IMG/VR virus record: IMGVR_UViG_3300005613_000002
Location: 124,001-188,000 of that record
Length of the DNA stretch: 64,000 nucleotides
Direction: 5' to 3' (one strand)
Notes under the pieces: model-generated
Databases searched by the model: none
What the model saw: only the letters and a program-made list of their open reading frames with translations
What the model was told of the DNA's origin: nothing
Translations under genes and position numbers: made by a program
Part shown: piece by piece, positions 123 through 43,579 of the stretch
Numbering within the stretch: the stretch's first letter is position 1
Layout: each line of letters starts with the position of its first letter

Positions 123-521
123 ATGAAATATAATTTATTCTTAGATGATGTTAGAAACCCGATTGATTGTGTATACTACATGTATACACCAATATATACT
201 AGTGTTGACTGGGTGATAGTTAGAGATTATAATTCTTTTATTAAAATAATTAAAGAAAATGGTTTACCTGAAATAATCTCCTTCGATCATGATTTATCTG
301 ATGAACATTATGACCCAAAAATGTATCATGAATCATATGATGAATTATATGATTCATTTAAAGAAAAAACTGGTTACGAATGTGCTAAATGGTTGGTAGA
401 TTATTGTATTGATAATAATGAATTTCTACCAAAAAAAATATTAGTACATTCAATGAATCCTATTGGTAGACGAAATATTGAGTCTTATTTCGAATCATAT
501 AATAAATCATTAAAATTATAG
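123..521 (+). CDS. Cyclic-phosphate processing receiver-like domain protein
   Basis: N-terminal LFLDDVR, SFDHDL, TGYECAKWL and VHSMNPIG motifs typical of this phage family linked to RNA repair. Confidence 0.7.
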   Translation: MKYNLFLDDVRNPIDCVYYMYTPIYTSVDWVIVRDYNSFIKIIKENGLPEIISFDHDLSDEHYDPKMYHESYDELYDSFKEKTGYECAKWLVDYCIDNNEFLPKKILVHSMNPIGRRNIESYFESYNKSLKL

Positions 522-2556: not shown

Positions 2557-2599
2557 TTTGCATTTAATGTAACATTTTATACCTTTGTACCGTATTTAG
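2557..2599 (+). promoter_or_regulatory. Composite promoter of tRNA operon 1 (Bacteroidetes TTTG-N19-TAnnTTTG overlapping TGTAAC-N17-CGTA)
   Basis: TTTG 2557-2560, TACCTTTG 2580-2587, TGTAAC 2568-2573, CGTA 2591-2594; near-identical to 22438-22480. Confidence 0.65.
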
Positions 2600-2649
2600 A
2601 TTAAAGCACTATAAAAATGTGCAATTAAAAATTAATGATAAAAATAAAA

Positions 2650-2766
2650 ATGATGAAAAACTTGATGAACATATTAGCAATTGTAGTGATGTTGGATGCT
2701 GTCCTATTATGGGATGATGCGGAAGAATTATGTAATGTCGGGTTTAAATCTAAAACAGGTGTATAA
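2650..2766 (+). CDS. Leader peptide 1 (MMKNLMNILAIVVMLDAVLLWDDAEELCNVGFKSKTGV), putative attenuator
   Basis: 38-codon ORF between promoter and terminator; contains TCGGGTTT (2738-2745), complementary to the terminator 5' arm. Confidence 0.8.
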   Translation: MMKNLMNILAIVVMLDAVLLWDDAEELCNVGFKSKTGV

Positions 2767-2786
2767 ATAATACCTATAAGATAAAT

Positions 2787-2821
2787 AAAAAACCCGATTT
2801 AGAAATGAATCGGGTTTTTTT
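2787..2821 (+). terminator. Attenuator terminator 1
   Basis: AAAAAACCCGATT / AATCGGGTTTTTTT hairpin with U-tract. Confidence 0.85.
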
Positions 2822-2859
2822 GTGTTTAAAATTGTTGTTCTTTGAAATGTTGGGAATTT

Positions 2860-5983: not shown

Positions 5984-6056
5984 TCCGACATAGCGCAGTT
6001 GGTTAGCGTACTCCCGTTAGAGGGAGGGGTCACTGGTTCGAGTCCAGTTGTCGGTA
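5984..6056 (+). tRNA. Atypical tRNA with 6-nt anticodon loop (GTTAGA), identity uncertain
   Basis: Good acceptor, D and T arms; CTCCC/GGGAG stem closes only 6 nt. Confidence 0.6.
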
Positions 6057-6171
6057 CAGGAGGGGTAGTTTATAAGGATTCCTATTGATACGGATGAAAA
6101 CTCAACATGGTGACGTTAGTAGAATGAATGAAACCAGTAGTAAATCTACATACGCTATAAAACTAACAAAT

Positions 6172-8006: not shown

Positions 8007-8366
8007 GGGGCAGCACGGTTTTGACAGCGTGTATGAGTGATAATGTAAGCAAGTAGTAGTTGAATTAATCTACTTTAAAAGGATTCAAAACTATAAATGT
8101 AGAAGACATTATGTCTATCCAAACTTCTGTAACAAGAGGTGAAAGCGTATTTGCAAGAAATACTGAACTTGCAATTGCAGCATAGGAAACAAGAAAACAG
8201 TAGAACCATCTGATGATGTTACGATTTGTGTGATTACGTTAACACCTTAGATGAAAAACTCCACAGCAATCATACTATTTTTGGAAGGTTAGAAAACTTT
8301 ATCCTAAACTTGTAGAAATCTTATTAATCACATGTTTGGACAGGGGTTCGATTCCCCTCTGCTCCA
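8007..8366 (+). ncRNA. ssrA: tmRNA
   Basis: 5' GGGGCAG..TTTGAC and 3' GGGGTTCGATTCCCCTCTGCTCCA tRNA-like domain; tag frame 8099-8185 ending ELAIAA-TAG. Confidence 0.9.
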
Positions 8367-8544
8367 CTAAAATAATTATTATGAGTAATAAAAAAATTAA
8401 TAACATTAAAGAAAGTCTTGAATATCTTAAAAAGAATAAAACAGTTTCAACAAAACAACTATTTGATGATATTGAGACTGAAACAATTTATGATTTAAAA
8501 GCAATGGGATATATTGGTTTTGGTAAAAATAAACATTAAGGTAT

Positions 8545-11767: not shown

Positions 11768-12856
11768 ATGAAAATACTAGAAAAAATAGATTGGAGTGTC
11801 TTAGACACATATATTGAAAATAATTTAATTGTTTCAAACAAACATCCAGATTATGATATTTGGATATTAAATTATTCACCAAAAACACAATATAATCAAT
11901 TATGGGATGAATATACTTTATCTTGTCGTGGACTTATTATTGATGCAGAAGGTAATATATTAGGTAGACCATTTCAAAAATTTAAAAATTTCGAAGAATA
12001 TGACCCATCAGAAATTGATATGTCAAAAAAATATGAAATCTTTGAAAAAATGGATGGTTCGTTAATTATTTTATTTTATTACTCTGTGACTAATGAATGG
12101 ATTGTTGCAAGTAGAGGCTCATTCATATCTGAACAATCAGATGAAGCAAGAAAAATGCTTAATAAAATTGACAATATTTTTAGTAAATTAAGTAATAATT
12201 TCACATACATATTTGAAATATTATATGCTGAAAATAGAATAGTCGTTAACTATGGAAATAGATGGGAACTAGTAATGTTAAGTTGTATCGACACTGTTAC
12301 TGGTATTGAATTGAAACATAAAAATTTAGTTGGTGGATATTCTGATTATTTTTCAATTGTGAAAAAATATGATCTAAAAGTTAATGATTTATTTGAACTT
12401 AAAAAACTTGATGAAAATAATAGAGAAGGTTTTGTGATTAGGTTTGAGGATGGTTTTAGAATTAAAGTTAAATTTGAAGAATATGTGAGATTACACGGTA
12501 TTCTTACAAATGTGTCTAATGTTACAGTTTGGGAACACTTAATGAATAAATATGATTTTGAATTATTATCAGATAGAGTTCCAGATGAAATGTATACTTG
12601 GTTAAATAAAACTATAAGTAAATTACAAATAGAATATAATGAAATTGAAAGATTAGCACTAAAAGAATTTGTGAGAATTTATCATATAAATAATATTACA
12701 ACTCGTAAAGAATTTGCAATGGAAGCATTGAAAAGTAAATATCGTTCAATATTATTTAATGTGTTTGATAGAAAATCTTATGATATCATCATATGGAAAA
12801 TGATAAAACCAATTCGTAGCACACCATTTAGAGATGGTTATGAATATATTGCTTAA
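11768..12856 (+). CDS. T4 Rnl1-like RNA ligase
   Basis: CRGLI, KFKN, EKMDGS (motif I), FE, NRIVV, EGFV, KVK. Confidence 0.85.
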   Translation: MKILEKIDWSVLDTYIENNLIVSNKHPDYDIWILNYSPKTQYNQLWDEYTLSCRGLIIDAEGNILGRPFQKFKNFEEYDPSEIDMSKKYEIFEKMDGSLIILFYYSVTNEWIVASRGSFISEQSDEARKMLNKIDNIFSKLSNNFTYIFEILYAENRIVVNYGNRWELVMLSCIDTVTGIELKHKNLVGGYSDYFSIVKKYDLKVNDLFELKKLDENNREGFVIRFEDGFRIKVKFEEYVRLHGILTNVSNVTVWEHLMNKYDFELLSDRVPDEMYTWLNKTISKLQIEYNEIERLALKEFVRIYHINNITTRKEFAMEALKSKYRSILFNVFDRKSYDIIIWKMIKPIRSTPFRDGYEYIA

Positions 12857-13003
12857 ATATAATTAACTGAAAAACAATAAGATATAAATTAATTTAATGG
12901 TTTTTAAAAAAAGATTAAAATTTTGTTGTTTGTTACGTATTTATGACATATATTTGTACCTCAATTTAGAGAATAGAAAACAACAATTATTAAATACAAA
13001 AAA

Positions 13004-13084
13004 ATGAAAACTAATAAAACATATTACGGTTATAAATCATATAAGAAAAATCTTATTGATATCGGGATTGTTTTGTTAAATTGA
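13004..13084 (+). CDS. Leader peptide 2 (MKTNKTYYGYKSYKKNLIDIGIVLLN), putative attenuator
   Basis: 26-codon Tyr/Lys-rich ORF; ATCGGG (13061-13066) complementary to terminator CCCGAT; TATATTTG and GTATTTAT motifs upstream. Confidence 0.8.
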   Translation: MKTNKTYYGYKSYKKNLIDIGIVLLN

Positions 13085-13119
13085 TAACAAAGTATAAACA
13101 ATGATTTTATATAAACATT

Positions 13120-13150
13120 GAGACCCGATTCGAAAGATTCGGGTCTTTTT
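13120..13150 (+). terminator. Attenuator terminator 2
   Basis: AGACCCGA / TCGGGTCT hairpin with U-tract. Confidence 0.85.
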
Positions 13151-13365
13151 GTTTTATAGTAAATTGTGAAAATATTGAAAGTTATTTGAAATTGTGATAG
13201 AAAATTTAAATGAAAAATTATTAAATGAATTTGTGTAACATACGCAATCGTGAGATAAAAAAACAAGAACAGTGGAAGGTGCTGACAGGCATTGATTCGG
13301 GAAATAATTTAGTAGGTTGGGTAAGTATAAAACAAAAGTAAAATAATGAGTAGACATACTAATAG

Positions 13366-13450
13366 ACATTTGTAGCTCAGTTGGTAGAGCAAGGGAACAC
13401 GTTTGCGTATCTTTAATCCCTGTGCGTAGGTTCGAATCCTACTGAATGTA
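13366..13450 (+). tRNA. tRNA-Lys-like gene with 20-nt expanded anticodon loop
   Basis: AGGGA/TCCCT stem encloses ACACGTTTGCGTATCTTTAA. Confidence 0.6.
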
Positions 13451-13471
13451 AGAACCTATTAGTATGAAGTT

Positions 13472-13552
13472 GGATAGGTAGGTAAGTGGTTAAAACGGGT
13501 GGACTGTAAATCCATTGCTTCGGCTTCGGGGGTTCGAATCCCTCTCTATCCA
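13472..13552 (+). tRNA. tRNA-Tyr(GTA)
   Basis: GTGGA-CT-GTA-AA-TCCAT arm; long variable arm. Confidence 0.9.
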
Positions 13553-13586
13553 CAACAGGTTACTAAATAATAGTAACATTAATGAT

Positions 13587-13661
13587 ACACCTGTAGCTCA
13601 GATGGCAGGTAGCTACGCCCTTTTAAGGCGAAGGTCATGGGTTCGAGTCCCATCAGGTGTA
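13587..13661 (+). tRNA. tRNA-Lys(TTT)
   Basis: CGCC-CT-TTT-AA-GGCG arm. Confidence 0.85.
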
Positions 13662-13788
13662 CTTCGAGATATTTTGCAGTTTTTGACTCTTTCAATAAAA
13701 ACTGAGAATAGTGGACAAGGTACGAAAGGAATTTCCAAATGTCAGAGATAATTTCAATGACGTGAACTAACCAATAATGTTCACAAAC

Positions 13789-13872
13789 GGGTAGGTATGC
13801 AAATTGGTGAAGCAAGCGGTCTGTAAAACCGTGACGTAAGAGACAATGGCGGTTCGAGTCCGTCCCTGCCCA
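13789..13872 (+). tRNA. tRNA-Tyr(GTA)
   Basis: GCGGT-CT-GTA-AA-ACCGT arm; long variable arm. Confidence 0.9.
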
Positions 13873-13901
13873 CATTACTAAAAAATAGTAATAATAGGCA
13901 T

Positions 13902-13976
13902 TCCCCTATAGCTCAGTTGGTTTAGAGCACCTCACTTTTAATGAGGGAGTCCTCGGTTCGAGTCCGAGTGGGGGAA
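13902..13976 (+). tRNA. tRNA-Lys(TTT)
   Basis: CCTCA-CT-TTT-AA-TGAGG arm. Confidence 0.9.
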
Positions 13977-14058
13977 CTAAATATTTTAATTTTCCTTGCA
14001 ATTATAATTATTTTTTGTTATTTTTAATTAAAATAATTCTATATAAGTATTAATAAAT

Positions 14059-14760
14059 ATGACAAAGAAAATTAAAAAAACAAAAACTGTAGTTACAACA
14101 GTAATAGAAGAAAATGTAACAAATGAAAAAACACACATTATTTGTATTTTAGACCGTTCTGGGTCAATGACTAAAATCATGGATGATTCAATTGGTGGTT
14201 TTAATACATTCCTAAAAAAACAAAGAGAATTACCAGATGATGCAACTATAACTATTTCAATATTTGATGATAGATATGAAGTATTATTTGATAATGTTGA
14301 TATTAAATCAGTTAAAGATTTAACTAACAAGGAATGGTATCCAAGAGGTACTACTGGATTATATGATGCAATTGGAAAAACAATTAATAACACCAAAGCA
14401 GAATTTGAAAAACTTGGTGATGAAAAACCATCAAAAGTATTAGTTTGTATAGTAACTGATGGACAAGAAAATTCAAGTAGAGAATATCAACTTGATGATA
14501 TAAAAAAATTAATTGGTGATTGCGAAAATGATAATTGGAACTTTATGTATTTAGCAGCAAACCAAGATGCATTTGCAGTTGGAACATCATTTGGTGTGTC
14601 TGCTGGTAATACATTTACATATAAAGCAAATGGAACTGGTGTTCAAAGTATGAGTAATACTTTGAATAACGCAACAGTTAGTTATAGATCAATGTCATCT
14701 AATATGAGTAGTTTTGCTGATTCTTCAAAAAATTTAATTGATAATATTTCTAAAGAATAA
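14059..14760 (+). CDS. vWA domain protein
   Basis: MIDAS motif ILDRSGSM, TGLYDAIG, IVTDGQENSS. Confidence 0.85.
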   Translation: MTKKIKKTKTVVTTVIEENVTNEKTHIICILDRSGSMTKIMDDSIGGFNTFLKKQRELPDDATITISIFDDRYEVLFDNVDIKSVKDLTNKEWYPRGTTGLYDAIGKTINNTKAEFEKLGDEKPSKVLVCIVTDGQENSSREYQLDDIKKLIGDCENDNWNFMYLAANQDAFAVGTSFGVSAGNTFTYKANGTGVQSMSNTLNNATVSYRSMSSNMSSFADSSKNLIDNISKE

Positions 14761-14994
14761 ATATTATATATTTTTTATAACTATAATAATTGGGATGGTT
14801 TTTACTATCCCTTTTTCATTAAATAATCATTAATATTATTCACAAAAAAAACGTAAAAGTCTATACCACAAATCCTTAAAAAATATCGAAAAATTAATTT
14901 AAAATAAACTCTAAAGTTTATCAAAACCCTTGTATTTATTGAAACAAATAAATATATTTGCAATAATAATTTATAATAAAAATTTATAAAAAAT

Positions 14995-17834: not shown

Positions 17835-19133
17835 ATGAATAGAGGATTCAATTTTAGGGTTTACCCAACTGAAAAACAACGTGAATATTTTAATGAATGT
17901 TTTAGAATTTCAAATTTCATTTATAATTATTCTTTAAGACAACAAATAGACATATCTGAAAGTTTAGATGATATGGGAATTAAAGACAAAGAAGAAAGAA
18001 ATAAATATATGACAGTTAATAAATTATATTTCAATAAATATAAAATGAGTAATTTATTAACTCAAATGTCTAAAACAGAAGAATATTCCTTTTTAAATAT
18101 CAATTCTTTATTAAGAGGTTATTCGTTAAGACAAATTGATAATGCTTTTAAAAATATGAGAAAAACTGGTGCTGGTTTTCCTAAATTTAAAAATAGATTA
18201 TCAAAAAAAACATATTCTAGTCAAATTCAAAAAAGAACTAAATTTCATTTAAATTTAAATAATGAAAAATTTGGATATTTATCGACACATAAAATTGATA
18301 AATTAAAAATATCATGTCATGATGAATATTTTAGAAAAAATTATAAAGATAATACAAAAATTAAATTAAATTCATTTACTATTACAAATAAAGGTAATCA
18401 ATATCATATATCAATTCAGGTAGATGTTATTGACCCAAATTTTAATTTAAAACATAAAGAAAGTGAAATTAATGAAAATTCATCAATAGGAATTGATTTA
18501 GGAGTTAAAAGACCAATTACTACATCAAATATTAATGATTTCGATGAAAAAATATTTTCAACTCAAATACAATTATTAAAAACGTATAGTGAAGAATTAA
18601 AAAAATTATCATCAATATTAAATAAAAAACGTGATTACCATAAAAAAAATAAAACAGATATTAAATATTGGGAAAGTGTTAATTATATTAGAATAAAAAA
18701 TAAAATTAGTTCACTACATATTAAAATTGGTAATATTAGAAGTAATATTCAACATAATATAACAAAAAAATTAATTAATTTAGATAATGTTGATTCATAT
18801 ATTCTTGAAGAATTAAAAACTAAAAATATGATGAAACGTAGTGGGAAAGGTTTATCTAATAATAAAAGTGGGTTAAATAGAGTACTTAGTGATGTTGGAT
18901 TATATGGAATAAGAGAAAAATTAACATATAAAGCTGAACGTATTGGTAAAAATGTTATTACAGTACCACCACAATATACTTCACAAAAATGTTCGAATTG
19001 TGGTCATATTAATAAGAAAAATAGAAAATCTCAAAGCAAATTTAATTGTGTTAAATGTGGTTTTAAAATTAATGCAGATTTAAATGCTGCGATAAATATA
19101 AAAGATAAATATTTTAAAAAAAATGTTGTTTAA
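17835..19133 (+). CDS. TnpB/Cas12f-like RNA-guided nuclease (compact type V effector candidate)
   Basis: OrfB HTH RVYPTEKQ, RuvC-I GIDLG, RuvC-II LEEL, CSNC/CVKC Zn finger, RuvC-III NADLNAAINI; CRISPR array 200 nt downstream. Confidence 0.85.
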   Translation: MNRGFNFRVYPTEKQREYFNECFRISNFIYNYSLRQQIDISESLDDMGIKDKEERNKYMTVNKLYFNKYKMSNLLTQMSKTEEYSFLNINSLLRGYSLRQIDNAFKNMRKTGAGFPKFKNRLSKKTYSSQIQKRTKFHLNLNNEKFGYLSTHKIDKLKISCHDEYFRKNYKDNTKIKLNSFTITNKGNQYHISIQVDVIDPNFNLKHKESEINENSSIGIDLGVKRPITTSNINDFDEKIFSTQIQLLKTYSEELKKLSSILNKKRDYHKKNKTDIKYWESVNYIRIKNKISSLHIKIGNIRSNIQHNITKKLINLDNVDSYILEELKTKNMMKRSGKGLSNNKSGLNRVLSDVGLYGIREKLTYKAERIGKNVITVPPQYTSQKCSNCGHINKKNRKSQSKFNCVKCGFKINADLNAAINIKDKYFKKNVV

Positions 19134-22437: not shown

Positions 22438-22480
22438 TTTGGAGTTAATGTAACATTTTATACCTTTGTAACGTATTTAT
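22438..22480 (+). promoter_or_regulatory. Composite promoter of tRNA operon 3
   Basis: TTTG-N19-TACCTTTG, TGTAAC-N17-CGTA and GTATTTAT overlap. Confidence 0.65.
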
Positions 22481-22531
22481 GAACTCAAGGCAGTAAGCCA
22501 GTAAGATTTTAACAATAAAAAATAGATTATT

Positions 22532-22669
22532 ATGAGAAATTCAGTTATTAATATTAATATCACTTCGGGAACGACTATTAGTCGCAATGGGAATGGTATA
22601 TTCTGTTCAATTTTTGGCAGAAATATTACACATGACGAGTCTTTAATAATGGAAGAAGATAGAGGATAA
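22532..22669 (+). CDS. Leader peptide 3 (MRNSVININITSGTTISRNGNGIFCSIFGRNITHDESLIMEEDRG), putative attenuator
   Basis: 45-codon ORF; CGAGTCTTT (22636-22644) complementary to terminator AAAGACTCG (22695-22703). Confidence 0.8.
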   Translation: MRNSVININITSGTTISRNGNGIFCSIFGRNITHDESLIMEEDRG

Positions 22670-22691
22670 AAAACTCTAACTAAACGAAATT

Positions 22692-22726
22692 AAAAAAGAC
22701 TCGATATTAATCGGGTCTTTTTTTTT
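22692..22726 (+). terminator. Attenuator terminator 3
   Basis: AAAAAAGACTCGAT / ATCGGGTCTTTTTT hairpin with U-tract. Confidence 0.85.
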
Positions 22727-22750
22727 GTTCATTGACGTGTTGGTAAATTT

Positions 22751-23108: not shown

Positions 23109-23447
23109 ATGAAAAAACGTGGTGGTCATAAAATTGGAATTGAAGGATTGTTAAAAGCAGCCGATAAAAAAAGAATGACGAATGAAGAATGTTTTATTGA
23201 AAATTCAACATATCCTCGTCATAGATTAAAAGAAAGAATAATTAAACAAAATTTAATTGAATATCGTTGTAAAATTTGTGATAATAATGGAATGTGGATG
23301 AATAAACCAATGCCATTAATATTAGACCATAAAAATGGTATTAATAATGATAATAGAATAGATAACCTTAGATTTGTTTGTAGTAATTGTGATTCTCAAT
23401 TACCAACATATAAAAATCGAAGGGGAAACATAAAAATGGAAGATTAG
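23109..23447 (+). CDS. HNH homing endonuclease
   Basis: CKIC..LDHKNGINNDNRIDNLRFVCSNC. Confidence 0.85.
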   Translation: MKKRGGHKIGIEGLLKAADKKRMTNEECFIENSTYPRHRLKERIIKQNLIEYRCKICDNNGMWMNKPMPLILDHKNGINNDNRIDNLRFVCSNCDSQLPTYKNRRGNIKMED

Positions 23448-24143: not shown

Positions 24144-24271
24144 GGTGTTATAGCTCAGTTGGTCAGAGCGTTGAGTGATAACTCAAGTCAGAAATTAAAT
24201 ACGAATTGGTTAAGGTTAAAACGAAAATTCTACTGATTTAATTTGCATTGGTTCAAATCCAGTTAACACCA
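24144..24271 (+). tRNA. tRNA-Ile(GAT)-like gene with ~55-nt insertion in the variable region
   Basis: GGTGTTA/TAACACC acceptor, TTGAG-TGATAA-CTCAA arm, T arm displaced to ~24247. Confidence 0.6.
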
Positions 24272-24486: not shown

Positions 24487-24912
24487 ATGAAAATATTAAT
24501 AATGGGATTACCTACTTCAGGTAAAACATGGTTTGCTGAAAGATTACAAAATGAAATTGGTTGTGCATGGTATAATGCTGATGCTGTTAGAACAATGGCT
24601 AATGATTGGGATTTTAGTGTTGAAGGTCGTAACAGACAAGCACTGAGAATGAAAACATTTGCTGATTTTGAAAATAATAATGATAGAATTGTTGCTTGTG
24701 ATTTTGTCTGTCCTACACCAGAAACTAGATTATTATTTAAACCTGATTTAATTATTTGGATTAACACTATTGATAAATCAAAATATCAAGATACTAATAA
24801 AGTTTTTATTAAACCAAATGATTCAGAAGGTTTTAAATTAATTGAAATCACAAAAAAAGTTATACTTGAAGATATAATTGAATTAGCAAATAAACATATA
24901 ACAACAAGTTGA
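24487..24912 (+). CDS. Adenylylsulfate-kinase-like P-loop kinase
   Basis: GLPTSGKT, NADAVR, DWDFSVEGR, DFVCP. Confidence 0.75.
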   Translation: MKILIMGLPTSGKTWFAERLQNEIGCAWYNADAVRTMANDWDFSVEGRNRQALRMKTFADFENNNDRIVACDFVCPTPETRLLFKPDLIIWINTIDKSKYQDTNKVFIKPNDSEGFKLIEITKKVILEDIIELANKHITTS

Positions 24913-25887: not shown

Positions 25888-26523
25888 ATGGCTAGAAAAG
25901 AAAAAAAATATCATTTCATATATAAAACAACTAATGTTGTTACTAATAGATATTATTATGGAATGCATAGTACCGATAATTTAGATGATAATTATTTAGG
26001 TAGTGGTAGGAGATTAAAATACTCAATTAATAAACATGGTAAAGAAAACCATGAAAGAGAAATTGTTGAATTTTGTCAAGACCGAAGTTCATTGAAAAAA
26101 CGTGAAAGTGAATTAGTTAATCTTAATGAGATTGCTAAAAAAGATTGTATGAATCTAATGGTTGGTGGGACTGGTGGTTTTGTTTCTAAAGAAGCAGCAA
26201 GAAAAGGTGCTAAAGCACTGAAGATTAAATATGGTGATGAATATAAAAATAAATTGATAGAATGGGGTGCTAAAGGTGGACAATCAACATCGGATAAACA
26301 TGGTTCACCATTTAATAATATTATGAATAGATGTAATTGGACTAATAAAAGTCATACCGAAAAAACTAAAAGAAAAATGAGTGAGTCAAGTAAAGGTATC
26401 GGTATTGGAAATAATAATTCACAATTCGGTACTTGTTGGATTACAAATGAAAAAGATAATAGAAAAATAAATAAAGAAGACTTAATCCCAGAAGGATGGA
26501 GATTAGGAAGAAAAATAATATAA
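25888..26523 (+). CDS. GIY-YIG (Seg-like) homing endonuclease with NUMOD3 repeat
   Basis: FIYKTTN..YYYGMH..YLGSG; HTEKTKRKMS. Confidence 0.85.
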   Translation: MARKEKKYHFIYKTTNVVTNRYYYGMHSTDNLDDNYLGSGRRLKYSINKHGKENHEREIVEFCQDRSSLKKRESELVNLNEIAKKDCMNLMVGGTGGFVSKEAARKGAKALKIKYGDEYKNKLIEWGAKGGQSTSDKHGSPFNNIMNRCNWTNKSHTEKTKRKMSESSKGIGIGNNNSQFGTCWITNEKDNRKINKEDLIPEGWRLGRKII

Positions 26524-27232: not shown

Positions 27233-27303
27233 TACTTGTTAGTACAATGGATAGTGCACCCTTTCGAAAGAGGGTTATATTGGTTCGAATCCAATGCAGG
27301 TAC
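27233..27303 (+). tRNA. Degenerate tRNA-Arg(TCG)-like gene
   Basis: Acceptor, D and T arms present; irregular anticodon stem around TTTCGAA. Confidence 0.5.
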
Positions 27304-27675: not shown

Positions 27676-28074
27676 ATGGTATTGCAAGAAAAAATTAAAA
27701 AAGAAATGCTTTCTGCTATGAAAGCAAAGGAAACTGAAAAATTAAGTTTTTTGAGAGTTCTTAGTGGTGAATTAAGTACAAATAATAAAAGAACTGGAAA
27801 AGAAAAATTAGATGAATTACAAATTATTCGTAAAATGTCTAATAACGCTAAAGAATTAGGTAACTTAGTTGAAGTAGAAATGCTTAGTGAATATCTACCA
27901 AAGATGCTTGAACCAAAAGAAATTAAAGTTATTGTTAAGAATATCATTGATGTAAATGGTTATTCAACAATGAAAGAAATGGGTCAGATAATGGGGAAAA
28001 TTAAGCAATGTAAAGAAAGTACAAAAATTGATATGAAATCAGCTAATATTTTTATTAGAGAATTATTAACATAA
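27676..28074 (+). CDS. GatB/YqeY domain protein
   Basis: LQEKIKKEMLSAMKAK..LR; YLPKML; MKEMGQIMG. Confidence 0.85.
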   Translation: MVLQEKIKKEMLSAMKAKETEKLSFLRVLSGELSTNNKRTGKEKLDELQIIRKMSNNAKELGNLVEVEMLSEYLPKMLEPKEIKVIVKNIIDVNGYSTMKEMGQIMGKIKQCKESTKIDMKSANIFIRELLT

Positions 28075-31480: not shown

Positions 31481-32341
31481 ATGATATCAAACAGAGCAAA
31501 ACGAATAGGTTTAAAAGAATTAGAAATTTTTGATAATTTTTTTATTGATAAAACATTACCTAAATTTAAGATGGAATCCACTAATAATAAGGCAGATATG
31601 GGTGGGGTTTCATGGTCAACACCATCTGAAGGTGGTGTTACTGATAGTGGGAATTGGGAAAATGATTCTGGTGGGTTTTCGTTTAGAAGAAAGTTAATTT
31701 CGTTGTTATCTCCAAAAGATAAAAAACCGAAACAACCGAAAAGAACATTAACTACTCTTGAATTATTTACTGCATTATCAAAATCATATAAAGAATTATC
31801 AAAAATTGGTGAGGTTGCTGAACATTACGAAAAAGCACTTATTCAAGCAAAAACATTAGGTCAAACAGCATTGTTTGATAAATTAAAAGATTTAGTTGAT
31901 GTAGTTAAAGGTGAAGCAATATTAATTGCAATGGGTTTAACCAAATATGTGACTGAAAAACAAATTGTTGATTTTTATGGGTTAGTTGGTGAGGATAAAA
32001 ATTTAAAGTTGACATGGATTAAAAACTTCAATAGAATAATTCCTGAAGATATTTACGAAGTTAAAAAAGATGTTGATGGACGTAAAATATTTGATAATTA
32101 CGTTATTCTTCATTATGACCCAGAAAATAATGGCGAAGAATTAACAAAACAAGAATTAGAAGATAAAAAAGACCCAATATTATTCGGTTTGATTAAAGAT
32201 AGTAAAAAACTTTATTATGTTGCTGATTGGAAAGATGATTATTGTGATTTAACTCTTGAAGAAATGTTTAATGAATTAGGTGAGAAAACATTAAAAATTA
32301 ATAACAGAAACGTAAAAACATTCATTGATAAAATTAAATAA
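31481..32341 (+). CDS. Hypothetical phage protein
   Basis: Long ORF with KDPILFG..YYVADWKDDYCDLT; start uncertain. Confidence 0.55.
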   Translation: MISNRAKRIGLKELEIFDNFFIDKTLPKFKMESTNNKADMGGVSWSTPSEGGVTDSGNWENDSGGFSFRRKLISLLSPKDKKPKQPKRTLTTLELFTALSKSYKELSKIGEVAEHYEKALIQAKTLGQTALFDKLKDLVDVVKGEAILIAMGLTKYVTEKQIVDFYGLVGEDKNLKLTWIKNFNRIIPEDIYEVKKDVDGRKIFDNYVILHYDPENNGEELTKQELEDKKDPILFGLIKDSKKLYYVADWKDDYCDLTLEEMFNELGEKTLKINNRNVKTFIDKIK

Positions 32342-32709
32342 TGAAAGAAAACATTAATAATATTGCAGAAAAAATGTCAAGACTAAACGCTGTTGAACTT
32401 AGTGAGTTATCAAGTGTTTTATTATCTAAATATAATATGAGTGCAACAATTTATCATTTTGGTGTTGTACCAACAATAGAGAATCCTAATAATAATAATA
32501 AATGTGATTTAGTATTATTAGAATGTGGTCAAAGAAAATTAATGATTGTTAAATCAATTAAAGAAATTTTCGGATTAGGTCTTAAAGAAGCAAAAGATAT
32601 TATAGACACAGTACCAACCTATCTTAGTAAATCAATATCAATTGTAAAAGCAGAAAAAATTAAATTAGTGTTAGAGGAAATTGGTGCTAAAGTTGAAATT
32701 AATTATTAA
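32341..32709 (+). CDS. rplL: Ribosomal protein bL12 (L7/L12) homologue
   Basis: LNAVELSELS N-domain; KLMIVKSIKEIFGLGLKEAKDIID..P..AEKIKLVLEEIGAKVEI C-domain. Confidence 0.8.
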   Translation: MKENINNIAEKMSRLNAVELSELSSVLLSKYNMSATIYHFGVVPTIENPNNNNKCDLVLLECGQRKLMIVKSIKEIFGLGLKEAKDIIDTVPTYLSKSISIVKAEKIKLVLEEIGAKVEINY

Positions 32710-33191: not shown

Positions 33192-33276
33192 GGTGAGATA
33201 CTCAAATGGTAAAGAGGATAGTTTGCTAAACTATTAGGCTGTAACAGGTGCGTGGGTTCGAATCCCACTCTCACCG
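33192..33276 (+). tRNA. tRNA-Ser(GCT)
   Basis: ATAGT-TT-GCT-AA-ACTAT arm; long variable arm; G73. Confidence 0.9.
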
Positions 33277-35543: not shown

Positions 35544-35616
35544 GCTCCTGTGGCTGAATGGTTAAAGCAATGGACTCTAAATCCATTTTTTGCAGGTTCG
35601 AATCCTGTCAGGAGCG
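35544..35616 (+). tRNA. Amber suppressor tRNA (CTA)
   Basis: ATGGA-CT-CTA-AA-TCCAT arm; GCTCCTG/CAGGAGC acceptor; G73. Confidence 0.88.
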
Positions 35617-36551
35617 CAAAAAATAAATATAATGAATAAAATTATTGCCGAAGAATTACACAAAACTGAACCAGATAAATTTAAAATTTTCAGAGAATGG
35701 GGAAGTGTTAATAATAAAATTAAAGATTTTGAAAATAAAGCAAACCTAAAAACATTTAAATATCTTTTTGGTGAAGATGGGCAAAGATTATGTGAACATT
35801 TTAAATATGATTGTGAAACTAATGTTAATAAATTAAAAACATATTTAAAATATGAACAATATAACGATTTGCTTGTAAACATATATTATAATGATAATTT
35901 GTTTATTATTTAAAACAGATCAATAGATTTCATGATAAATTAGATGAAGTCAGTAGTAGACTTAAAGTAATTATTGATGATGAAACAAAAAAAGATGAAT
36001 GTAATGTTTTATCATTAAAATATTTCTTTTTAACTAATTTAGGGATAAAAATTGATGAATCTGTTGAATTTACTGTAAAACATTATCTTGATATGATAGA
36101 TAATGAGAATCCAATAACATTAATAAATGAACTTAAATAAATAAGATGGAAGTAAGTTATAATTATAATGAATTAGAATTCACTGCATATTATGATGAAG
36201 ATGGATATTTAAAATTTGTTAAAGATAATATCCATAATAAAGCATTAATGATTGAGAGTATTCAGGAAGGTAAAGGGTTTAATATTTCTAAATCTTCTTT
36301 TATGATGGATGGTTTTACTTGTCACGGAATGTATGTTCGAGTTATGGATATTAATTTATTCATACCAAAATTTATTTTCATAAAAAACAAAACTGATTAA
36401 TTATGGGAATGGATGTAGATGCTATTGTTGCAAGACAAGCAATTGAGAAAATTGGGAAAGTTTTATTAAGTGTAGAACATGGTGAACGTGAGGAAATTAC
36501 TGATGAAATTATAGAATTTTCAAAAAAACTTGAAAAAAAGTTTGGAAATAA

Positions 36552-41428: not shown

Positions 41429-41782
41429 ATTATCAACTTTTTTAAATGGTATTAATGTATTTATCCATATGAGTAAGATAATAAACGATATTGTTGATGA
41501 TTTAATGGATGATATTGATATCAAACCAAAAAGATCAAAATTGATTGTGAAATGGACAATTAGAATTTCTGTTTTAGCAATAGTTTGCGCTTTTTTAATT
41601 GGTCAACGTGGAGTGAGATTTTTTAATTCTATTAGTATTATTAAATCTGATATTGTTGTTATTAAAGAAGATATTTCAGATTTAAAAAAAACAGATGAAA
41701 AATTGGAGAGTTCAATAAAAGAAAACGAAAACGATATTGATGAAAATCATGATGACTTTATAAATTATAAATTAAAAAAACA

Positions 41783-42448
41783 ATGAAAATAGTTTTTATT
41801 TCTGATAGTCATAATAAACATAAACAATTAAAAAATTTACCAGAAGCAGATGTGATTGTACATTCTGGCGATTTTTCTTCAATGGGTTATGAACATGAGA
41901 TTCGTAATTTCTTAAAATGGTATTCCAAGTTATCACAATATAAGCACAAGATATTTATTGCTGGAAATCATGATAAATTGTTTGAAGATAATACTACTTT
42001 AGCTAAAACACTAATACCTGAAAATATTATTTATTTAGAAGACACAGGTATTGAGATAGATGGTATTACTTTTTATGGTAGTCCAGTTAGTTTACCTTTT
42101 CTTAATTGGTCATTTATGCGACCAGAATATAAATTAAAACAACATTGGGAAATAATTCCAAATGATACTGATGTTTTGATAACACATACTCCACCATTTG
42201 GAATTAAAGATTATGCTAGATTTGGTACTGGAAATCATTGTGGAAGTGAATCATTATATCATGAGGTAACTAATAGAATTAAACCAAAAATTCATTGTTT
42301 TGGTCATATTCATTCTGAGTATGGTGTGAGCAAAATTGGTGATACAACATTTATGAATGTATCAGTGTTGAACGATGATTACCAAATGCAAAATAAACCA
42401 ATACTTGTTGAATTAATTGATAATAAGGTAAATATTTTAGAAATATAA
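41783..42448 (+). CDS. Metallophosphoesterase
   Basis: SDSH, HSGD, GNHD, THTPP, FGHIH. Confidence 0.9.
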   Translation: MKIVFISDSHNKHKQLKNLPEADVIVHSGDFSSMGYEHEIRNFLKWYSKLSQYKHKIFIAGNHDKLFEDNTTLAKTLIPENIIYLEDTGIEIDGITFYGSPVSLPFLNWSFMRPEYKLKQHWEIIPNDTDVLITHTPPFGIKDYARFGTGNHCGSESLYHEVTNRIKPKIHCFGHIHSEYGVSKIGDTTFMNVSVLNDDYQMQNKPILVELIDNKVNILEI

Positions 42449-42691
42449 ATAAGTATGGGATTTAATATAAATGAAAAAATAAAAACTGAATTACATTATA
42501 AGGATATTGCATTAATTGCTGTTGCATTAGGTGATTATCAAAAAAGATATAAAGATTCAGCTAAACCAGAAATATTAAAACGAGCTAAAGATTTAGTAAA
42601 TAGATTAGGAATTGAAATGTATGATTGTCCAGAAGATAATGAATTACTAATTTTCTAATAATTTTAGTATTTATATTCAAAAGAATTTCTA

Positions 42692-43579
42692 ATGAATATT
42701 TACAAGATAATTAATGAAGAATATGCTAGATTTTTAAAAGAAGAATACGATGAAAATGTGTATGAAACTTTTTTTGAAAAAGAACAAACTATAAAGAATA
42801 ACATATTTGGTGATTTTTTATATAAAAATAATTCTGACTTTACAAAACATGTATATTGGAAACTTATACCTTATTTAAGATTAAAAAAGATTTGGGAAGA
42901 TTATATATCTAAAGGATTTATAAGAGATGAAAAAGGTTTAAACATGATAAAAGGCATTATGATTGCCAATACTATTAAAGTTGGTATATTTACCATGTTA
43001 GCTGGTCATACTCAAGAAAGTCCAGATGATGATTTTGAAGAAAATATTGGTTATTTTATTGATGACCAATTAAATTGTTTATTTAAACCAGATAAGAATG
43101 ATAAAAATCAATTAGAAAATCCTGAGAATCCTAATAAAGAAAAACCTGAACCACATCAAGAACCATGTAGAACTACAGTAGTGCCGTATATTCAAAGATT
43201 ATTTAATGAAAATAATGAATTAGGTCGTAATGAATTAAAAGAATTAATTAATGACGATTTAATTGGAAAATTTTATGATTATTATGCTGGAGATAAAGAT
43301 AATAAATTAGGTGGTTTTGTTAGTGATTATGGATTAAAACCATTACAAAAATTATTATTTCAATTAATGAAAACTCAAGAATCAAAAGAAGAATTGGTTT
43401 TAATTGATAGAATGTTAAATGTATTACATCAACGTTCAGATATTGCAAGTTGGTTTGTTGAGGGTGGAAGTAACGCATTAAGTCAACTAAGTGGATATGA
43501 AACACCTGATGAAGAAAGTGGTGGTTATGACACTAAAAGCGTTATTTCTGGCAGATATAATATGTCTGATTACAATTAA
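42692..43579 (+). CDS. Hypothetical protein with N-terminal KIINEE motif
   Basis: 295 aa; GTATTTAT upstream. Confidence 0.6.
   Translation: MNIYKIINEEYARFLKEEYDENVYETFFEKEQTIKNNIFGDFLYKNNSDFTKHVYWKLIPYLRLKKIWEDYISKGFIRDEKGLNMIKGIMIANTIKVGIFTMLAGHTQESPDDDFEENIGYFIDDQLNCLFKPDKNDKNQLENPENPNKEKPEPHQEPCRTTVVPYIQRLFNENNELGRNELKELINDDLIGKFYDYYAGDKDNKLGGFVSDYGLKPLQKLLFQLMKTQESKEELVLIDRMLNVLHQRSDIASWFVEGGSNALSQLSGYETPDEESGGYDTKSVISGRYNMSDYN

What the first reader, a model, noticed from the sequence alone, without database searches (positions are those of the whole stretch)
11768..13976. Attenuator 2: Tyr/Lys operon next to an RNA ligase, a likely counter to anticodon nucleases
Nine of codons 2-15 are Tyr or Lys, and ATCGGG (13061-13066) pairs with terminator CCCGAT. 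Downstream are two Tyr(GTA), two Lys(TTT) and one Lys-like tRNA. Lys and Tyr tRNAs are known targets of defence nucleases, and an Rnl1-type ligase (tRNA repair in T4) lies immediately upstream. Inference: a dedicated replace-and-repair module.
Basis: partly seen in the sequence, partly recalled or inferred. Interest (0 to 1): 0.85.

Follow-up and report, generated by a model that had tools for sequence, protein, structure and literature searches.

The report
Demand-sensing switch on phage tRNA genes
A huge gut-type phage puts a tiny Tyr/Lys-rich reading frame and a stop/go RNA hairpin in front of its Tyr and Lys tRNA genes, apparently so that these tRNAs are made when ribosomes run short of them; this is a classic bacterial control device that I could not find reported for tRNA genes.

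Summary
A 26-codon ORF (13004-13084) has 9 Tyr/Lys among codons 2-15, the most extreme of 876 ATG-ORFs in the window. It is followed by a strong intrinsic terminator (13120-13147 plus T-tract). ATCGGG (13061-13066) can pair with the terminator's CCCGAT (13124-13129). Next come a tRNA-like gene, two tRNA-Tyr and two tRNA-Lys. An Rnl1-family ligase lies upstream.

It is one unit of a family. The window has two more look-alike units, and relatives have at least a dozen. In each, the leader peptide is built from the amino acids of the tRNAs behind it, for example QPQPQHH before Pro/His/Gln and SYESYYEEG before Glu/Tyr. In three genomes the true leader-to-tRNA pairing beats every permutation. Ten orthologous Lys/Tyr leaders keep the Tyr/Lys core, the hairpins and the Lys/Tyr tRNAs.

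Best reading: classic ribosome-mediated attenuation applied to tRNA operons, giving a negative feedback on decoding capacity.

The "replace-and-repair against anticodon nucleases" reading is only partly supported. The same switch gates operons for at least 17 amino acids. The ligase lies outside the attenuated unit, and the tRNA anticodon loops are canonical.

I found no prior description. All evidence is computational. Interest is high.

The parts
11768..12856 (+). Rnl1-family (T4 gp63-like) RNA ligase gene. It is a neighbour that lies outside the attenuated unit.
   Evidence: Pfam RNA_lig_T4_1 66.3 bits against a cutoff of 28.3. PDB 2c5u T4 Rnl1 1.6e-14, with motif I K94-M-D-G97 aligned to T4 KEDG. 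phrog_562 5.9e-62 over residues 19-348.
12922..12957 (+). Promoter-like region: TTTG boxes, the conserved CGTATTTAT (12936-12944) and the Bacteroidota-type -7-like box TATATTTG (12949-12956).
   Evidence: The block CGTATTTAT-N3-ATAYATTTGT is invariant in the four orthologues aligned. It retrieved 10 Lys/Tyr units from IMG/VR. CGTATTTA occurs 5 times in 64 kb, 3 of them at the three leaders. The promoter function is inferred.
13004..13084 (+). Leader ORF of 26 codons plus TGA. The control codons are Lys 2 and 5, then the core at codons 7-15 (13022-13048): Tyr Tyr Gly Tyr Lys Ser Tyr Lys Lys.
   Evidence: The core holds 6-8 Tyr/Lys in 9-10 codons in all nine distinct orthologues. The one gap within the ORF alignment is 3 nt long.
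13012..13077 (+). Hairpin 1:2 (anti-antiterminator). The control-codon strand 13012-13030 pairs with 13060-13077.
   Evidence: It is in the MFE and centroid folds, with a duplex estimate of -12.7 kcal/mol. It is recovered as the consensus by RNAalifold on 9 orthologues, which counts 7 pairs with compensatory changes over the whole predicted structure.
13058..13066 (+). Segment 2, the 5' strand of the antiterminator (GA-U-AUCGGG), inside codons 19-21 of the leader.
   Evidence: It pairs with 13124-13131 in every fold of the transcript truncated before the terminator's 3' arm when the ribosome is placed at codons 7-15. It is masked when the ribosome is at codon 17 or later, or at the stop codon.
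13120..13155 (+). Intrinsic terminator: 5' arm 13120-13131, GAAA loop 13132-13135, 3' arm 13136-13147, T-tract to 13155.
   Evidence: -17.3 kcal/mol. The region 12990-13160 folds with z = -5.0 against shuffles.
13366..13450 (+). tRNA-like gene with a 20-nt anticodon loop (13 extra nt). Its identity is unassigned.
   Evidence: Rfam tRNA 52 bits. ARAGORN does not call it. Its body is not specifically Lys-like.
13472..13553 (+). tRNA-Tyr(GTA)
13587..13662 (+). tRNA-Lys(TTT), with a divergent D-arm
13789..13873 (+). tRNA-Tyr(GTA)
13902..13977 (+). tRNA-Lys(TTT)
14059..14811 (+). VWA-domain gene (14059-14760) and the next terminator (14792-14811). This is the probable 3' end of the same transcription unit.
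   Evidence: The Pfam VWA matches are below threshold, but phrog_7371 gives 5.1e-62. The gene follows the Lys/Tyr tRNAs in L005, L009, L015, L020 and L021. Co-transcription is inferred.

Best explanation
This is a ribosome-mediated (leader-peptide) transcription attenuator that gates a small phage operon of Tyr and Lys tRNAs.

Transcription starts at a conserved promoter-like motif near 12936-12957. The 26-codon leader is translated as it emerges.

If Tyr or Lys codons are decoded slowly, because charged tRNA-Tyr or tRNA-Lys is scarce, the ribosome stalls in codons 7-15. This disrupts hairpin 1:2 and leaves AUCGGG (13061-13066) free to pair with CCCGAU (13124-13129). The terminator then cannot form, and RNA polymerase runs on into the tRNA genes.

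If decoding is fast, the ribosome runs over segment 2 to the stop codon at 13082-13084. The terminator (13120-13147 plus U-tract) forms and transcription ends.

Because the products are the very tRNAs that relieve the stall, the circuit is a negative feedback. It matches phage tRNA output to decoding demand.

It is one of several such units in this phage. Each leader is a 'barcode' of the amino acids whose tRNAs lie behind it.

Shown by sequence analysis: the anatomy, the alternative pairings, the conservation, and the leader/tRNA correspondence. Inferred: translation of the leader, transcription-translation coupling, stall-dependent read-through, and the physiological trigger.
For: (1) The codon cluster is unique in the window: 9 of 14, against a next best of 6 among 876 ORFs.

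(2) All four segments are present. Hairpin 1:2 is -12.7, the 2:3 antiterminator is -12.4 and the 3:4 terminator is -17.3 kcal/mol. With a ribosome footprint at codons 7-15 the truncated transcript forms 2:3. At codon 17 or later, or at the stop codon, segment 2 is masked.

(3) There are ten orthologous units in IMG/VR contigs with 60-67% ligase identity. All keep a Tyr/Lys core, and L005 has YYKQYYYKR, which keeps the composition but not the order. The ORF flanks vary, and the one gap within the ORF alignment is 3 nt long. All units are followed by Lys/Tyr tRNAs.

(4) RNAalifold recovers the 1:2 hairpin and the terminator, with 7 compensatory pairs. In L005 the terminator stem sequence differs (CCCAGTC), and the leader carries the matching AGACUG.

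(5) Family-wide evidence comes from the window units at 2635-2819 and 22532-22723, five units in LR745206.1, four in L003, and more in L015, L033, L051, L059 and L104. Each leader mirrors its downstream tRNAs. Examples are 36/44 residues at p=9e-7, Gln 7/15 at p=3e-8, and QPQPQHH before Pro/His/Gln. The true pairing is the single best of 120, 120 and 24 permutations in three genomes.

(6) The terminator 5' arm finds its best partner at the 3' end of the leader ORF. Fisher's combined p is 1e-6 over 9 non-orthologous units.

(7) When tRNAs are regrouped between lineages, the leaders change with them. Tyr sits with Lys here but with Glu in LR745206.1. Asp sits with Glu/Leu/Val here but with Pro/Gln there.

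(8) No Bacteroidota-type -7 box lies between the terminator and the first tRNA.
Against: There are no expression or biochemical data.

In this copy the antiterminator is short: 6 bp plus a bulge and 2 bp. Taken alone it falls only in the 8.5% tail of random segments.

The full-length MFE always contains the terminator, so antitermination must be kinetic.

Without a ribosome, the truncated transcript also prefers 2:3 in this copy. Basal termination therefore depends on 1:2 forming first.

The promoter assignment is by motif only, and the spacing from TTTG to the -7 box is atypical here (16 or 23 nt).

A 220-nt spacer of unknown function lies between the terminator and the first tRNA. A phage-specific promoter there cannot be excluded.

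Leader-peptide attenuation has not been demonstrated in the presumed Bacteroidota host, as far as I could check.
Confidence: 0.8

Rival explanations
1. The unit is a dedicated counter-defence module: the attenuator senses cleavage of host tRNA-Lys and tRNA-Tyr by anticodon nucleases, switches on replacement tRNAs, and the adjacent Rnl1 ligase repairs cut tRNAs.
For: tRNA-Lys is cut by PARIS AriB and by PrrC. tRNA-Tyr is degraded by retron-Eco7 PtuAB. Phage tRNA-Lys and tRNA-Tyr rescue infection, and abundance matters in that rescue (PMC11464382, PMC11555353).

The ligase is a full-length Rnl1/gp63 relative.

The ligase-leader-Lys/Tyr order is kept in at least 8 related contigs.

Lys and Tyr share a small operon of their own.

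Candidate end-healing parts exist in the window: a cREC_REC cyclic-phosphate-processing domain at 123-518 and a P-loop kinase at 24487-24909.

Any attenuator of this type would respond to nuclease-driven tRNA loss.
Against: Identical architecture gates the operons for all the other amino acids.

The ligase is upstream of the unit's promoter and is separated from it by about 2 kb of other genes in L003 and L009. It is next to RNR without tRNAs in L006, and absent from the 49 kb of LR745206.1 examined (L001), which holds five leader units.

The whole neighbourhood (MTase-ligase-...-VWA-RNR) is syntenic, so the adjacency needs no functional explanation.

In LR745206.1 Tyr is grouped with Glu, not Lys.

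The anticodon loops are canonical.

The host and its defence systems are unknown.
Confidence: 0.2
2. There is no regulation. The hairpin is simply the terminator of the upstream (ligase) transcription unit or an insulator, the small ORF is incidental, and the tRNAs are made from a promoter of their own.
For: Intrinsic terminators after genes are common. The promoter and leader translation are unproven. A 220-nt spacer follows the terminator.
Against: A conserved promoter-like block sits between the ligase stop codon and the ORF.

The ORF, its Tyr/Lys core and its frame are conserved in 10 contigs, while its flanks drift.

The leader/tRNA correspondence holds in more than 15 units and beats all permutations.

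The antiterminator complementarity is non-random.

No -7 box lies downstream of the terminator.
Confidence: 0.05
3. The attenuator is real, but its natural input is not host-versus-phage codon demand. Instead it serves as a timer. The phage's own shut-off of host tRNAs or host translation progressively slows leader decoding, so tRNA operons switch on as infection proceeds, possibly linked to the switch to TAG-recoded late genes.
For: The phage carries an amber-suppressor tRNA(CTA) at 35544-35617, and several ORFs end in TAG. It has a near-complete tRNA set, a tmRNA and an L7/L12 homologue, which suggests a takeover of translation.
Against: There is no leader in front of the suppressor tRNA. 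No host-tRNA nuclease was identified here. This reading is indistinguishable from the main explanation by sequence alone.
Confidence: 0.1

Closest known systems
Leader-peptide attenuators of enterobacterial amino-acid operons: trp, his and pheA, and the multivalent thr and ilvGMEDA leaders (established knowledge)
   Same: A short leader ORF with clustered control codons. Four RNA segments giving 1:2, 2:3 and 3:4 alternatives. An intrinsic terminator before the regulated genes. Stalling at control codons favours the antiterminator. Leaders with several amino acids exist in this family (ilv: Ile/Leu/Val; thr: Thr/Ile).
   Different: The cargo is tRNA genes, not biosynthetic enzymes. The product therefore acts directly on the sensed step (decoding) and not through amino-acid synthesis. 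The element is encoded by a phage with a Bacteroidota-type promoter. The leaders encode up to about 9 different amino acids, matching the operon's tRNA list. No Rfam leader family matches.
pheST (pheM leader) attenuator of E. coli phenylalanyl-tRNA synthetase (established knowledge)
   Same: Attenuation by cognate codons, used to set the level of a component of the translation apparatus for the same amino acid.
   Different: It regulates a synthetase protein, for a single amino acid, in a bacterial chromosome.
T-box riboswitches
   Same: Antitermination that reports the state of a specific tRNA pool and controls translation-related genes.
   Different: A T-box binds uncharged tRNA directly and has no leader ORF. 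No T-box match was found here. This element senses through a translating ribosome.
T4 Pnkp + Rnl1 repair of PrrC-cut tRNA-Lys, and T5-type rescue tRNAs against PARIS and retron-Eco7 (PMC11464382, PMC11555353)
   Same: An Rnl1-family ligase and phage-encoded tRNA-Lys and tRNA-Tyr are present side by side.
   Different: There is no adjacent Pnkp. The ligase is not co-regulated with the tRNAs. The anticodon loops are canonical. The switch is not specific to Lys/Tyr.
tRNA arrays of Lak-type megaphages (Devoto et al., bioRxiv 10.1101/356790)
   Same: A huge AT-rich phage with about 35 tRNAs, tRNAs with intron-like insertions, a T4-type RNA ligase, TAG recoding and highly expressed intergenic regions.
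   Different: That paper contains no occurrence of the words leader, terminator or attenuat-. The regulatory layer described here is not reported there.

Membership tests
Ribosome-mediated (leader-peptide) transcription attenuator | A short ORF in the 5' leader with a cluster of codons cognate to what is regulated | tested here: met
   9 of codons 2-15 are Tyr/Lys, unique among 876 ORFs. The cluster is conserved in 10 orthologues. The downstream genes are tRNA-Tyr and tRNA-Lys.
Ribosome-mediated (leader-peptide) transcription attenuator | An intrinsic terminator (GC-rich hairpin plus U-tract) between the leader ORF and the regulated genes | tested here: met
   13120-13147 plus TTTTTGTTTT, -17.3 kcal/mol.
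Ribosome-mediated (leader-peptide) transcription attenuator | An antiterminator: a segment at the 3' end of the ORF complementary to the terminator's 5' arm | tested here: met
   13058-13066 pairs with 13124-13131. It is weak alone (8.5% tail). It is stronger in the orthologues (GAAUCGGG, 8 bp) and significant family-wide at Fisher p=1e-6.
Ribosome-mediated (leader-peptide) transcription attenuator | A 1:2 hairpin that sequesters segment 2 and is opened by a ribosome stalled on the control codons | tested here: met
   MFE and centroid folds. The consensus of 9 orthologues includes compensatory pairs.
Ribosome-mediated (leader-peptide) transcription attenuator | Read-through rises when the cognate charged tRNA is limiting, and depends on the leader AUG | not testable with these tools
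   This needs reporter, Term-seq or in vitro coupled assays.
Ribosome-mediated (leader-peptide) transcription attenuator | The usual cargo: amino-acid biosynthesis, transport or aaRS genes | tested here: not met
   The cargo is five tRNA genes and possibly a VWA-domain gene. This is the feature that makes it a new variant.
Curated RNA leader / T-box families (Rfam) | A match to a covariance model at or near the gathering score | tested here: not met
   Only tRNA and tmRNA reach threshold in the window. In 12857-14058, nothing relevant appears at E<=1.
T4 Rnl1 (gp63) RNA ligase family (ORF 11768-12856) | A nucleotidyltransferase domain with the motif I lysine (KxDG), and a family HMM match above threshold | tested here: met
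   PF09511 66.3 bits against a cutoff of 28.3. K94-M-D-G97 is aligned to T4 KEDG in 2c5u. phrog_562 5.9e-62 is nearly full length.
T4-type tRNA repair pathway (Pnkp + Rnl1) | An end-healing enzyme (kinase/phosphatase) encoded with the ligase | tested here: inconclusive
   The neighbours are methyltransferases and a VWA protein. A cREC_REC domain at 123-518 and a P-loop kinase at 24487-24909 lie 10 kb or more away.
Nuclease-evading phage tRNAs (T5 tRNA-Lys type; anticodon-loop variants) | An altered anticodon stem-loop relative to the target tRNA | tested here: inconclusive
   The loops are canonical CUUUUAA and CUGUAAA. The stems cannot be judged without the host tRNAs. One extra tRNA-like gene has a 20-nt loop of unknown meaning.
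Dedicated Lys/Tyr counter-defence module | The regulation is specific to the targeted tRNAs and shared with the repair enzyme | tested here: not met
   The same switch sits on all tRNA operons. The ligase is outside the unit and separable from it in relatives.

The most novel reading that the evidence does not exclude
The whole tRNA complement of this phage lineage (about 35-40 genes) is partitioned into a few operons. Each operon sits behind a 'barcode' leader peptide that lists the amino acids of its own tRNAs. The phage thus runs a self-tuning, codon-by-codon supply system for decoding capacity. This would be the first case of tRNA genes controlled by ribosome-mediated attenuation. The same circuit would automatically compensate for host tRNA depletion, including by defence nucleases.
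Probability: 0.7. Interest if true: 0.92.

Novelty: new variant of a known kind. Interest (0 to 1): 0.87.

Why it matters
tRNA genes are generally thought to be controlled at the promoter (growth rate, stringent response), and phage tRNAs are thought to be simply co-expressed with early or middle genes.

A leader-peptide attenuator in front of tRNA operons would be a direct feedback from decoding speed to tRNA synthesis. It would show how a huge phage manages a near-complete tRNA set of its own.

It also bears on the long-running question of why phages carry tRNAs: codon supply, or replacement of depleted or cleaved host tRNAs. The circuit responds to either, and it makes the question testable with leader-reporter fusions.

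The family also offers a natural set of codon-specific ribosome-stalling sensors for nearly every amino acid, in a Bacteroidota context.

Tried and rejected
(1) AT-bias as the cause of the K/Y run: rejected by the window-wide scan.

(2) The sigma-70 promoter scan was uninformative: 48 sites against 45.8 expected. I used the conserved motif and the Bacteroidota -7 consensus instead.

(3) Full-length MFE folding with ribosome masks always kept the terminator. I therefore switched to transcripts truncated before the 3' arm.

(4) Rfam, at gathering and at E<=1, gave no leader, T-box or other cis-regulatory family.

(5) LR756500.1 around its RNR gene has no tRNAs in 49 kb, so it was uninformative.

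(6) The promoter-motif scan CTTTGTAMCGTATTTA gave 89 loci. Only 7 have tRNAs within 700 nt, and the rest look like chance hits.

(7) Relaxing the terminator criteria added a few weak hairpins (window 6470 and 29478; L005 790 and 1993) with no leader/tRNA match. I kept them in the permutation test as noise and did not count them as units.

(8) The 'Lys-like' identity of the tRNA at 13366-13450 is not supported by body similarity.

(9) I looked for leaders in front of tRNA-Ser(GCT) at 33192 and the suppressor tRNA at 35544 and found none.

(10) Six completed full-text literature searches, plus term searches within three huge-phage papers (the Lak megaphage, Jug phage and huge-phage clades papers), found no description of attenuated tRNA operons. 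Absence from that library is not proof of novelty.

The large protein database searches, structure prediction and the metagenome and genome scans were not needed and were not used.
Full report
CONTEXT. The window is 27% G+C. It carries 37 tRNA genes called by ARAGORN plus a tmRNA, all on the + strand. Rfam adds two tRNAs with large insertions. The window is part of IMG/VR contig UViG_3300005613_000002, which is 321,624 bp long. Its class II ribonucleotide reductase is closest to uncultured huge phages: LR745206.1 (634 kb) at 59% identity and LR756500.1 (462 kb). The next closest are crAss-like Bacteroides phages at about 40%. An amber-suppressor tRNA(CTA), ORFs ending in TAG, tRNAs with insertions and a T4-type RNA ligase all match what Devoto et al. 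described for Lak megaphages of Prevotella (10.1101/356790). I infer a huge phage of a Bacteroidota host. That inference is not proven.

THE OBSERVATION. ORF 13004-13084 encodes MKTNKTYYGYKSYKKNLIDIGIVLLN. Nine of codons 2-15 are Lys or Tyr. Among all 876 ATG-initiated open stretches of at least 20 codons in the window, on both strands, this is the only one with 9, and the runner-up has 6. The only 14-codon windows in any frame with at least 9 K/Y and at least 4 of each are at this locus. AT-rich composition therefore does not explain the run.

The terminator is a hairpin at 13120-13147 with a GAAA loop, followed by TTTTTGTTTT. It is one of only eight strong terminator-like sites on the + strand of the 64 kb. 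ATCGGG at 13061-13066 is complementary to CCCGAT at 13124-13129. The four ARAGORN tRNAs (Tyr, Lys, Tyr, Lys) and a fifth Rfam tRNA at 13366-13450 follow. The upstream ORF 11768-12856 is an Rnl1/gp63-family ligase with motif I K94-M-D-G97. The one caveat concerns the fifth tRNA: the 'Lys-like' label rests only on UCUUUAA at the end of a 20-nt anticodon loop, and its body is not specifically Lys-like.

ANATOMY OF THE SWITCH. The region 12990-13160 folds far better than shuffled sequence (z = -5.0). The minimum-energy fold has a long imperfect hairpin in which the control-codon strand (13012-13030) pairs with 13060-13077. This sequesters AUCG of the AUCGGG segment. The terminator follows.

Duplex estimates are 1:2 at -12.7, 2:3 at -12.4 and terminator 3:4 at -17.3 kcal/mol. 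In full-length RNA the terminator always wins, as in the classical attenuators, so the choice must be made co-transcriptionally.

I folded the transcript cut before the 3' arm of the terminator. With a 32-nt ribosome footprint whose A site is on any of codons 7-15, AUCGGG (plus G13058 and A13059) pairs with CCCGAU (plus U13130 and C13131). It forms the closing helix of a branched antiterminator. With the A site at codon 17 or at the stop codon, segment 2 is covered and the 5' arm stays free for the terminator. This is the geometry of the trp/his model (established knowledge): control codons in segment 1, segment 2 just downstream within the ORF, and the stop codon beyond it.

THE UNIT IS CONSERVED. 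Relatives of the ligase (60-67% identity) were found in IMG/VR, and the order ligase ... Lys/Tyr tRNAs is kept. A conserved block upstream of the leader, CGTATTTAT-N3-ATAYATTTGT, contains a TAnnTTTG box. By my knowledge this box is the Bacteroidota -7 consensus. The block retrieved further copies.

In all, ten contigs (nine distinct sequences) carry the unit. Every leader has a core of 9-10 codons with 6-8 Tyr/Lys:
- YYGYKSYKK
- SYYRYKSYKK
- YYYGKKSYKK
- YYLYKTYKK
- YYKQYYYKR (L005)

Codons 2-6 and the tail drift freely. The one gap within the ORF alignment is 3 nt long. Synonymous changes occur inside the core (TAT/TAC, AAA/AAG, TCA/TCC/TCT). Every unit is followed by Lys and Tyr tRNAs. L005 keeps the composition but not the order, which is what is expected of regulatory codons rather than of a functional peptide.

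RNAalifold on nine sequences returns the 1:2 hairpin and the terminator, with seven pairs showing compensatory changes. In L005 the terminator stem has a different sequence (CCCAGUC/GACUGGG), and the leader carries AGACUG at the corresponding place.

IT IS ONE MEMBER OF A FAMILY, WHICH IS THE MAIN FINDING. Two other terminators in the window resemble this one. Each is preceded by the same promoter-like motif (TTTG-N19-TAccTTTG-TAaCGTATTTA) and a short ORF.

Unit 1 in the window:
- Leader 2635-2766: ..MMKNLMNILAIVVMLDAVLLWDDAEEL..
- Terminator 2788-2819.
- Followed by tRNAs Asp, Asp, Glu, Leu, Glu, Val, Leu, Ala, Ala, Trp, Leu, Leu, Met.

Unit 3 in the window:
- Leader 22532-22669: MRNSVININITSGTTISRNGNGIFCSIFGRNIT..
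- Terminator 22692-22723.
- Followed by Cys, Ile, Ile, Ser, Asn, Asn, Phe, Phe, Gly, Thr, Met, Thr, Arg, Arg, Arg, Gly.

Units in LR745206.1:
- ..SYESYYEEG.. precedes Glu x4 and Tyr x2.
- ..ISIAVIGNGAGAI.. precedes Ile, Gly, Met, Gly.
- MTTMNLNMTMNLTLNVVNITLCNIR.. precedes Asn, Arg, Leu, Val, Ile, Thr, Met.
- ..PVNPQPQDQDP.. precedes Pro, Asp x4, Pro.
- MTTTQQIQQQQINQTD precedes Gln x3.

Units in other loci:
- L003: MTQPQPQHHDIS precedes Pro, His, Gln.
- L051..HTQPQPQQHPQ.. precedes Pro and His.
- L059..QPQPQHHPQ.. precedes Pro, His, Gln.

STATISTICS FOR THE FAMILY. I used an unbiased rule for choosing leaders. The leader is the longest ATG-ORF that ends within 110 nt of a terminator, where the terminator is followed within 400 nt by a tRNA. 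A few spurious hairpins were left in as noise. Under this rule the true leader-to-tRNA-set pairing scores highest of all 120, 120 and 24 permutations in the window, LR745206.1 and L003. Individual binomial p-values go down to 3e-8.

The best partner of each terminator's 5' arm lies at the 3' end of its own leader ORF. Fisher's combined p is 1e-6 over nine non-orthologous units.

tRNAs are partitioned differently in different lineages, and the leaders follow the partition. Tyr is with Lys here but with Glu in LR745206.1. Asp is with Glu/Leu/Val here but with Pro/Gln there.

In this window the three units cover 17 amino acids. Pro, His and Gln are missing here, and in relatives they form a fourth unit.

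MECHANISM. The best-supported explanation is classical ribosome-mediated attenuation applied to tRNA operons. Slow decoding of Tyr/Lys codons leads to a stalled ribosome, then the antiterminator, then read-through and more tRNA-Tyr and tRNA-Lys. Fast decoding leads to termination. Because the products relieve the stall, the loop is homeostatic.

The phage proteome is rich in Lys (10.3%), Ile, Asn and Tyr (background), so a demand/supply mismatch with the host is plausible. That last step is inferred.

Shown by computation: the ORF, the structures, the conservation and the leader/tRNA correspondence. Not shown: translation of the leader, coupling, the promoter, and the response itself.

No -7-type box lies between the terminator and the first tRNA. 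A phage-specific promoter in the 220-nt spacer cannot be excluded. I put this explanation at 0.8.

THE COUNTER-DEFENCE READING. The literature premise is sound. PARIS AriB cleaves tRNA-Lys, and T5 supplies a non-cleavable tRNA-Lys (PMC11464382). Retron-Eco7 PtuAB depletes tRNA-Tyr, PrrC targets tRNA-Lys, and phage tRNAs rescue infection, partly through sheer abundance (PMC11555353). An attenuator that raises tRNA output when decoding slows would fit that strategy.

Nothing ties this unit specifically to defence, however:
- The same design serves all the other amino acids.
- The ligase ends before the unit's promoter. It is separated from the leader by about 2 kb of unrelated genes in L003 and L009.
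- The ligase sits next to RNR without tRNAs in L006.
- The 49 kb of LR745206.1 examined (L001), which holds five leader units, contains no ligase.
- The whole block MTase-ligase-leader-tRNAs-VWA-RNR is syntenic in the clade, so adjacency alone carries little weight.
- The anticodon loops are canonical.
- No Pnkp is adjacent. A cREC_REC cyclic-phosphate-processing domain (123-518) and a P-loop kinase (24487-24909) elsewhere in the tRNA region could be end-healing partners, but this is untested.

I rate the dedicated-module reading at 0.2. It is not exclusive of the main one.

COMPARISON AND NOVELTY. The device works like the trp, his, thr and ilv leaders. In logic it is closest to the pheST (pheM) attenuator, which tunes a translation component by its own codons. 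T-boxes are functional analogues that bind tRNA directly. It meets the structural membership criteria of leader-peptide attenuators. It differs in cargo (tRNA genes), in owner (a phage) and in the breadth of its multi-amino-acid 'barcodes'.

No Rfam family matches. Six completed full-text searches and term searches within three huge-phage papers (the Lak megaphage, Jug phage and huge-phage clades papers) found no description of attenuated tRNA operons. That library is incomplete, so novelty is probable rather than certain. I class the finding as a new variant of a known kind.

VERDICT. The specific link to the ligase and to anticodon nucleases remains a hypothesis.

Noticed in passing
window 2557-2859 and 22438-22750: Two further leader/terminator units of the same design. 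Leaders 2635-2766 and 22532-22669, terminators 2788-2819 and 22692-22723. They gate operons for Asp/Glu/Leu/Val/Ala/Trp/Met and for Cys/Ile/Ser/Asn/Phe/Gly/Thr/Met/Arg tRNAs. Both share a TTTG-N19-TAccTTTG-TAaCGTATTTA promoter-like motif.
   Followed up: yes
window 13366-13450 and 24144-24271: tRNA genes with insertions: a 20-nt anticodon loop, and an insertion of about 55 nt. ARAGORN misses both and Rfam finds them. They resemble the 'enigmatic tRNA introns' reported for Lak phages. Splicing or function is unknown.
   Followed up: partly
window 2837-2859 and 22727-22750; also L104, L033: A conserved 23-24-nt motif (GTTCTTTGAAATGTTGGGAATTT and GTTCATTGACGTGTTGGTAAATTT). It fills the gap between the terminator T-tract and the 5' end of the first tRNA in units 1 and 3. 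Its function is unknown; it may be a processing signal. It does not look like a promoter.
   Followed up: partly
L009 13150-13300 and relatives L011, L013, L014, L020, L021: In the L009-type Lys/Tyr units, the spacer between terminator and first tRNA carries repeated GCATAAAAACGCATA and TGAAAAACAG(G/T)TAT motifs. This may be a protein-binding array. The window's 220-nt spacer (13156-13365) is different and unexplained.
   Followed up: no
window 123-518 and 591-2009: ORF with a cREC_REC 'cyclic-phosphate processing receiver' domain (Pfam 1.2e-23). It ends in TAG and is in frame with the next ORF of 473 aa, which has no family match. It is a possible RNA end-healing component.
   Followed up: partly
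window 24487-24909: A P-loop kinase (phrog_10255 8.7e-25; weak APS_kinase/AAA_18 matches) embedded among the tRNAs of operon 3. It is a candidate polynucleotide kinase.
   Followed up: partly
window 8007-8367: A phage tmRNA (Rfam 94 bits, tag ending ..LAIAA) lying inside the first attenuated operon, between tRNA-Trp and tRNA-Leu.
   Followed up: no
window 35544-35617: tRNA with anticodon CTA (an amber suppressor, called 'Pyl' by ARAGORN). Several ORFs end in TAG, consistent with TAG recoding. No leader precedes it.
   Followed up: partly
window 5984-6057 and 27233-27303: tRNA genes for which ARAGORN reports a 2-nt and a 4-nt (cgaa) anticodon. These are possible frameshift-type or degenerate tRNAs.
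   Followed up: no
window 17835-19130: A TnpB/Cas12f-like (IS605 OrfB) gene between the RNR gene and a large VWA-domain gene.
   Followed up: no
window 32341-32706 and 27676-28071: A ribosomal protein L7/L12 C-terminal-domain homologue and a YqeY-like protein inside the tRNA region. Together with the tRNAs they suggest a 'translation island'.
   Followed up: no
window 23109-23444 and 25888-26520: HNH and GIY-YIG-like (SegE-type, weak) endonuclease ORFs inserted between tRNA genes of operon 3. Homing endonucleases in tRNA regions have been linked to the amplification of anti-defence loci (PMC13096335 abstract).
   Followed up: no
L001 (LR745206.1) 41704-42752: Two attenuators in series. A Pro/Gln/Asp leader precedes Pro and Asp tRNAs. 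A Gln-only leader and terminator then precede three Gln tRNAs.
   Followed up: partly
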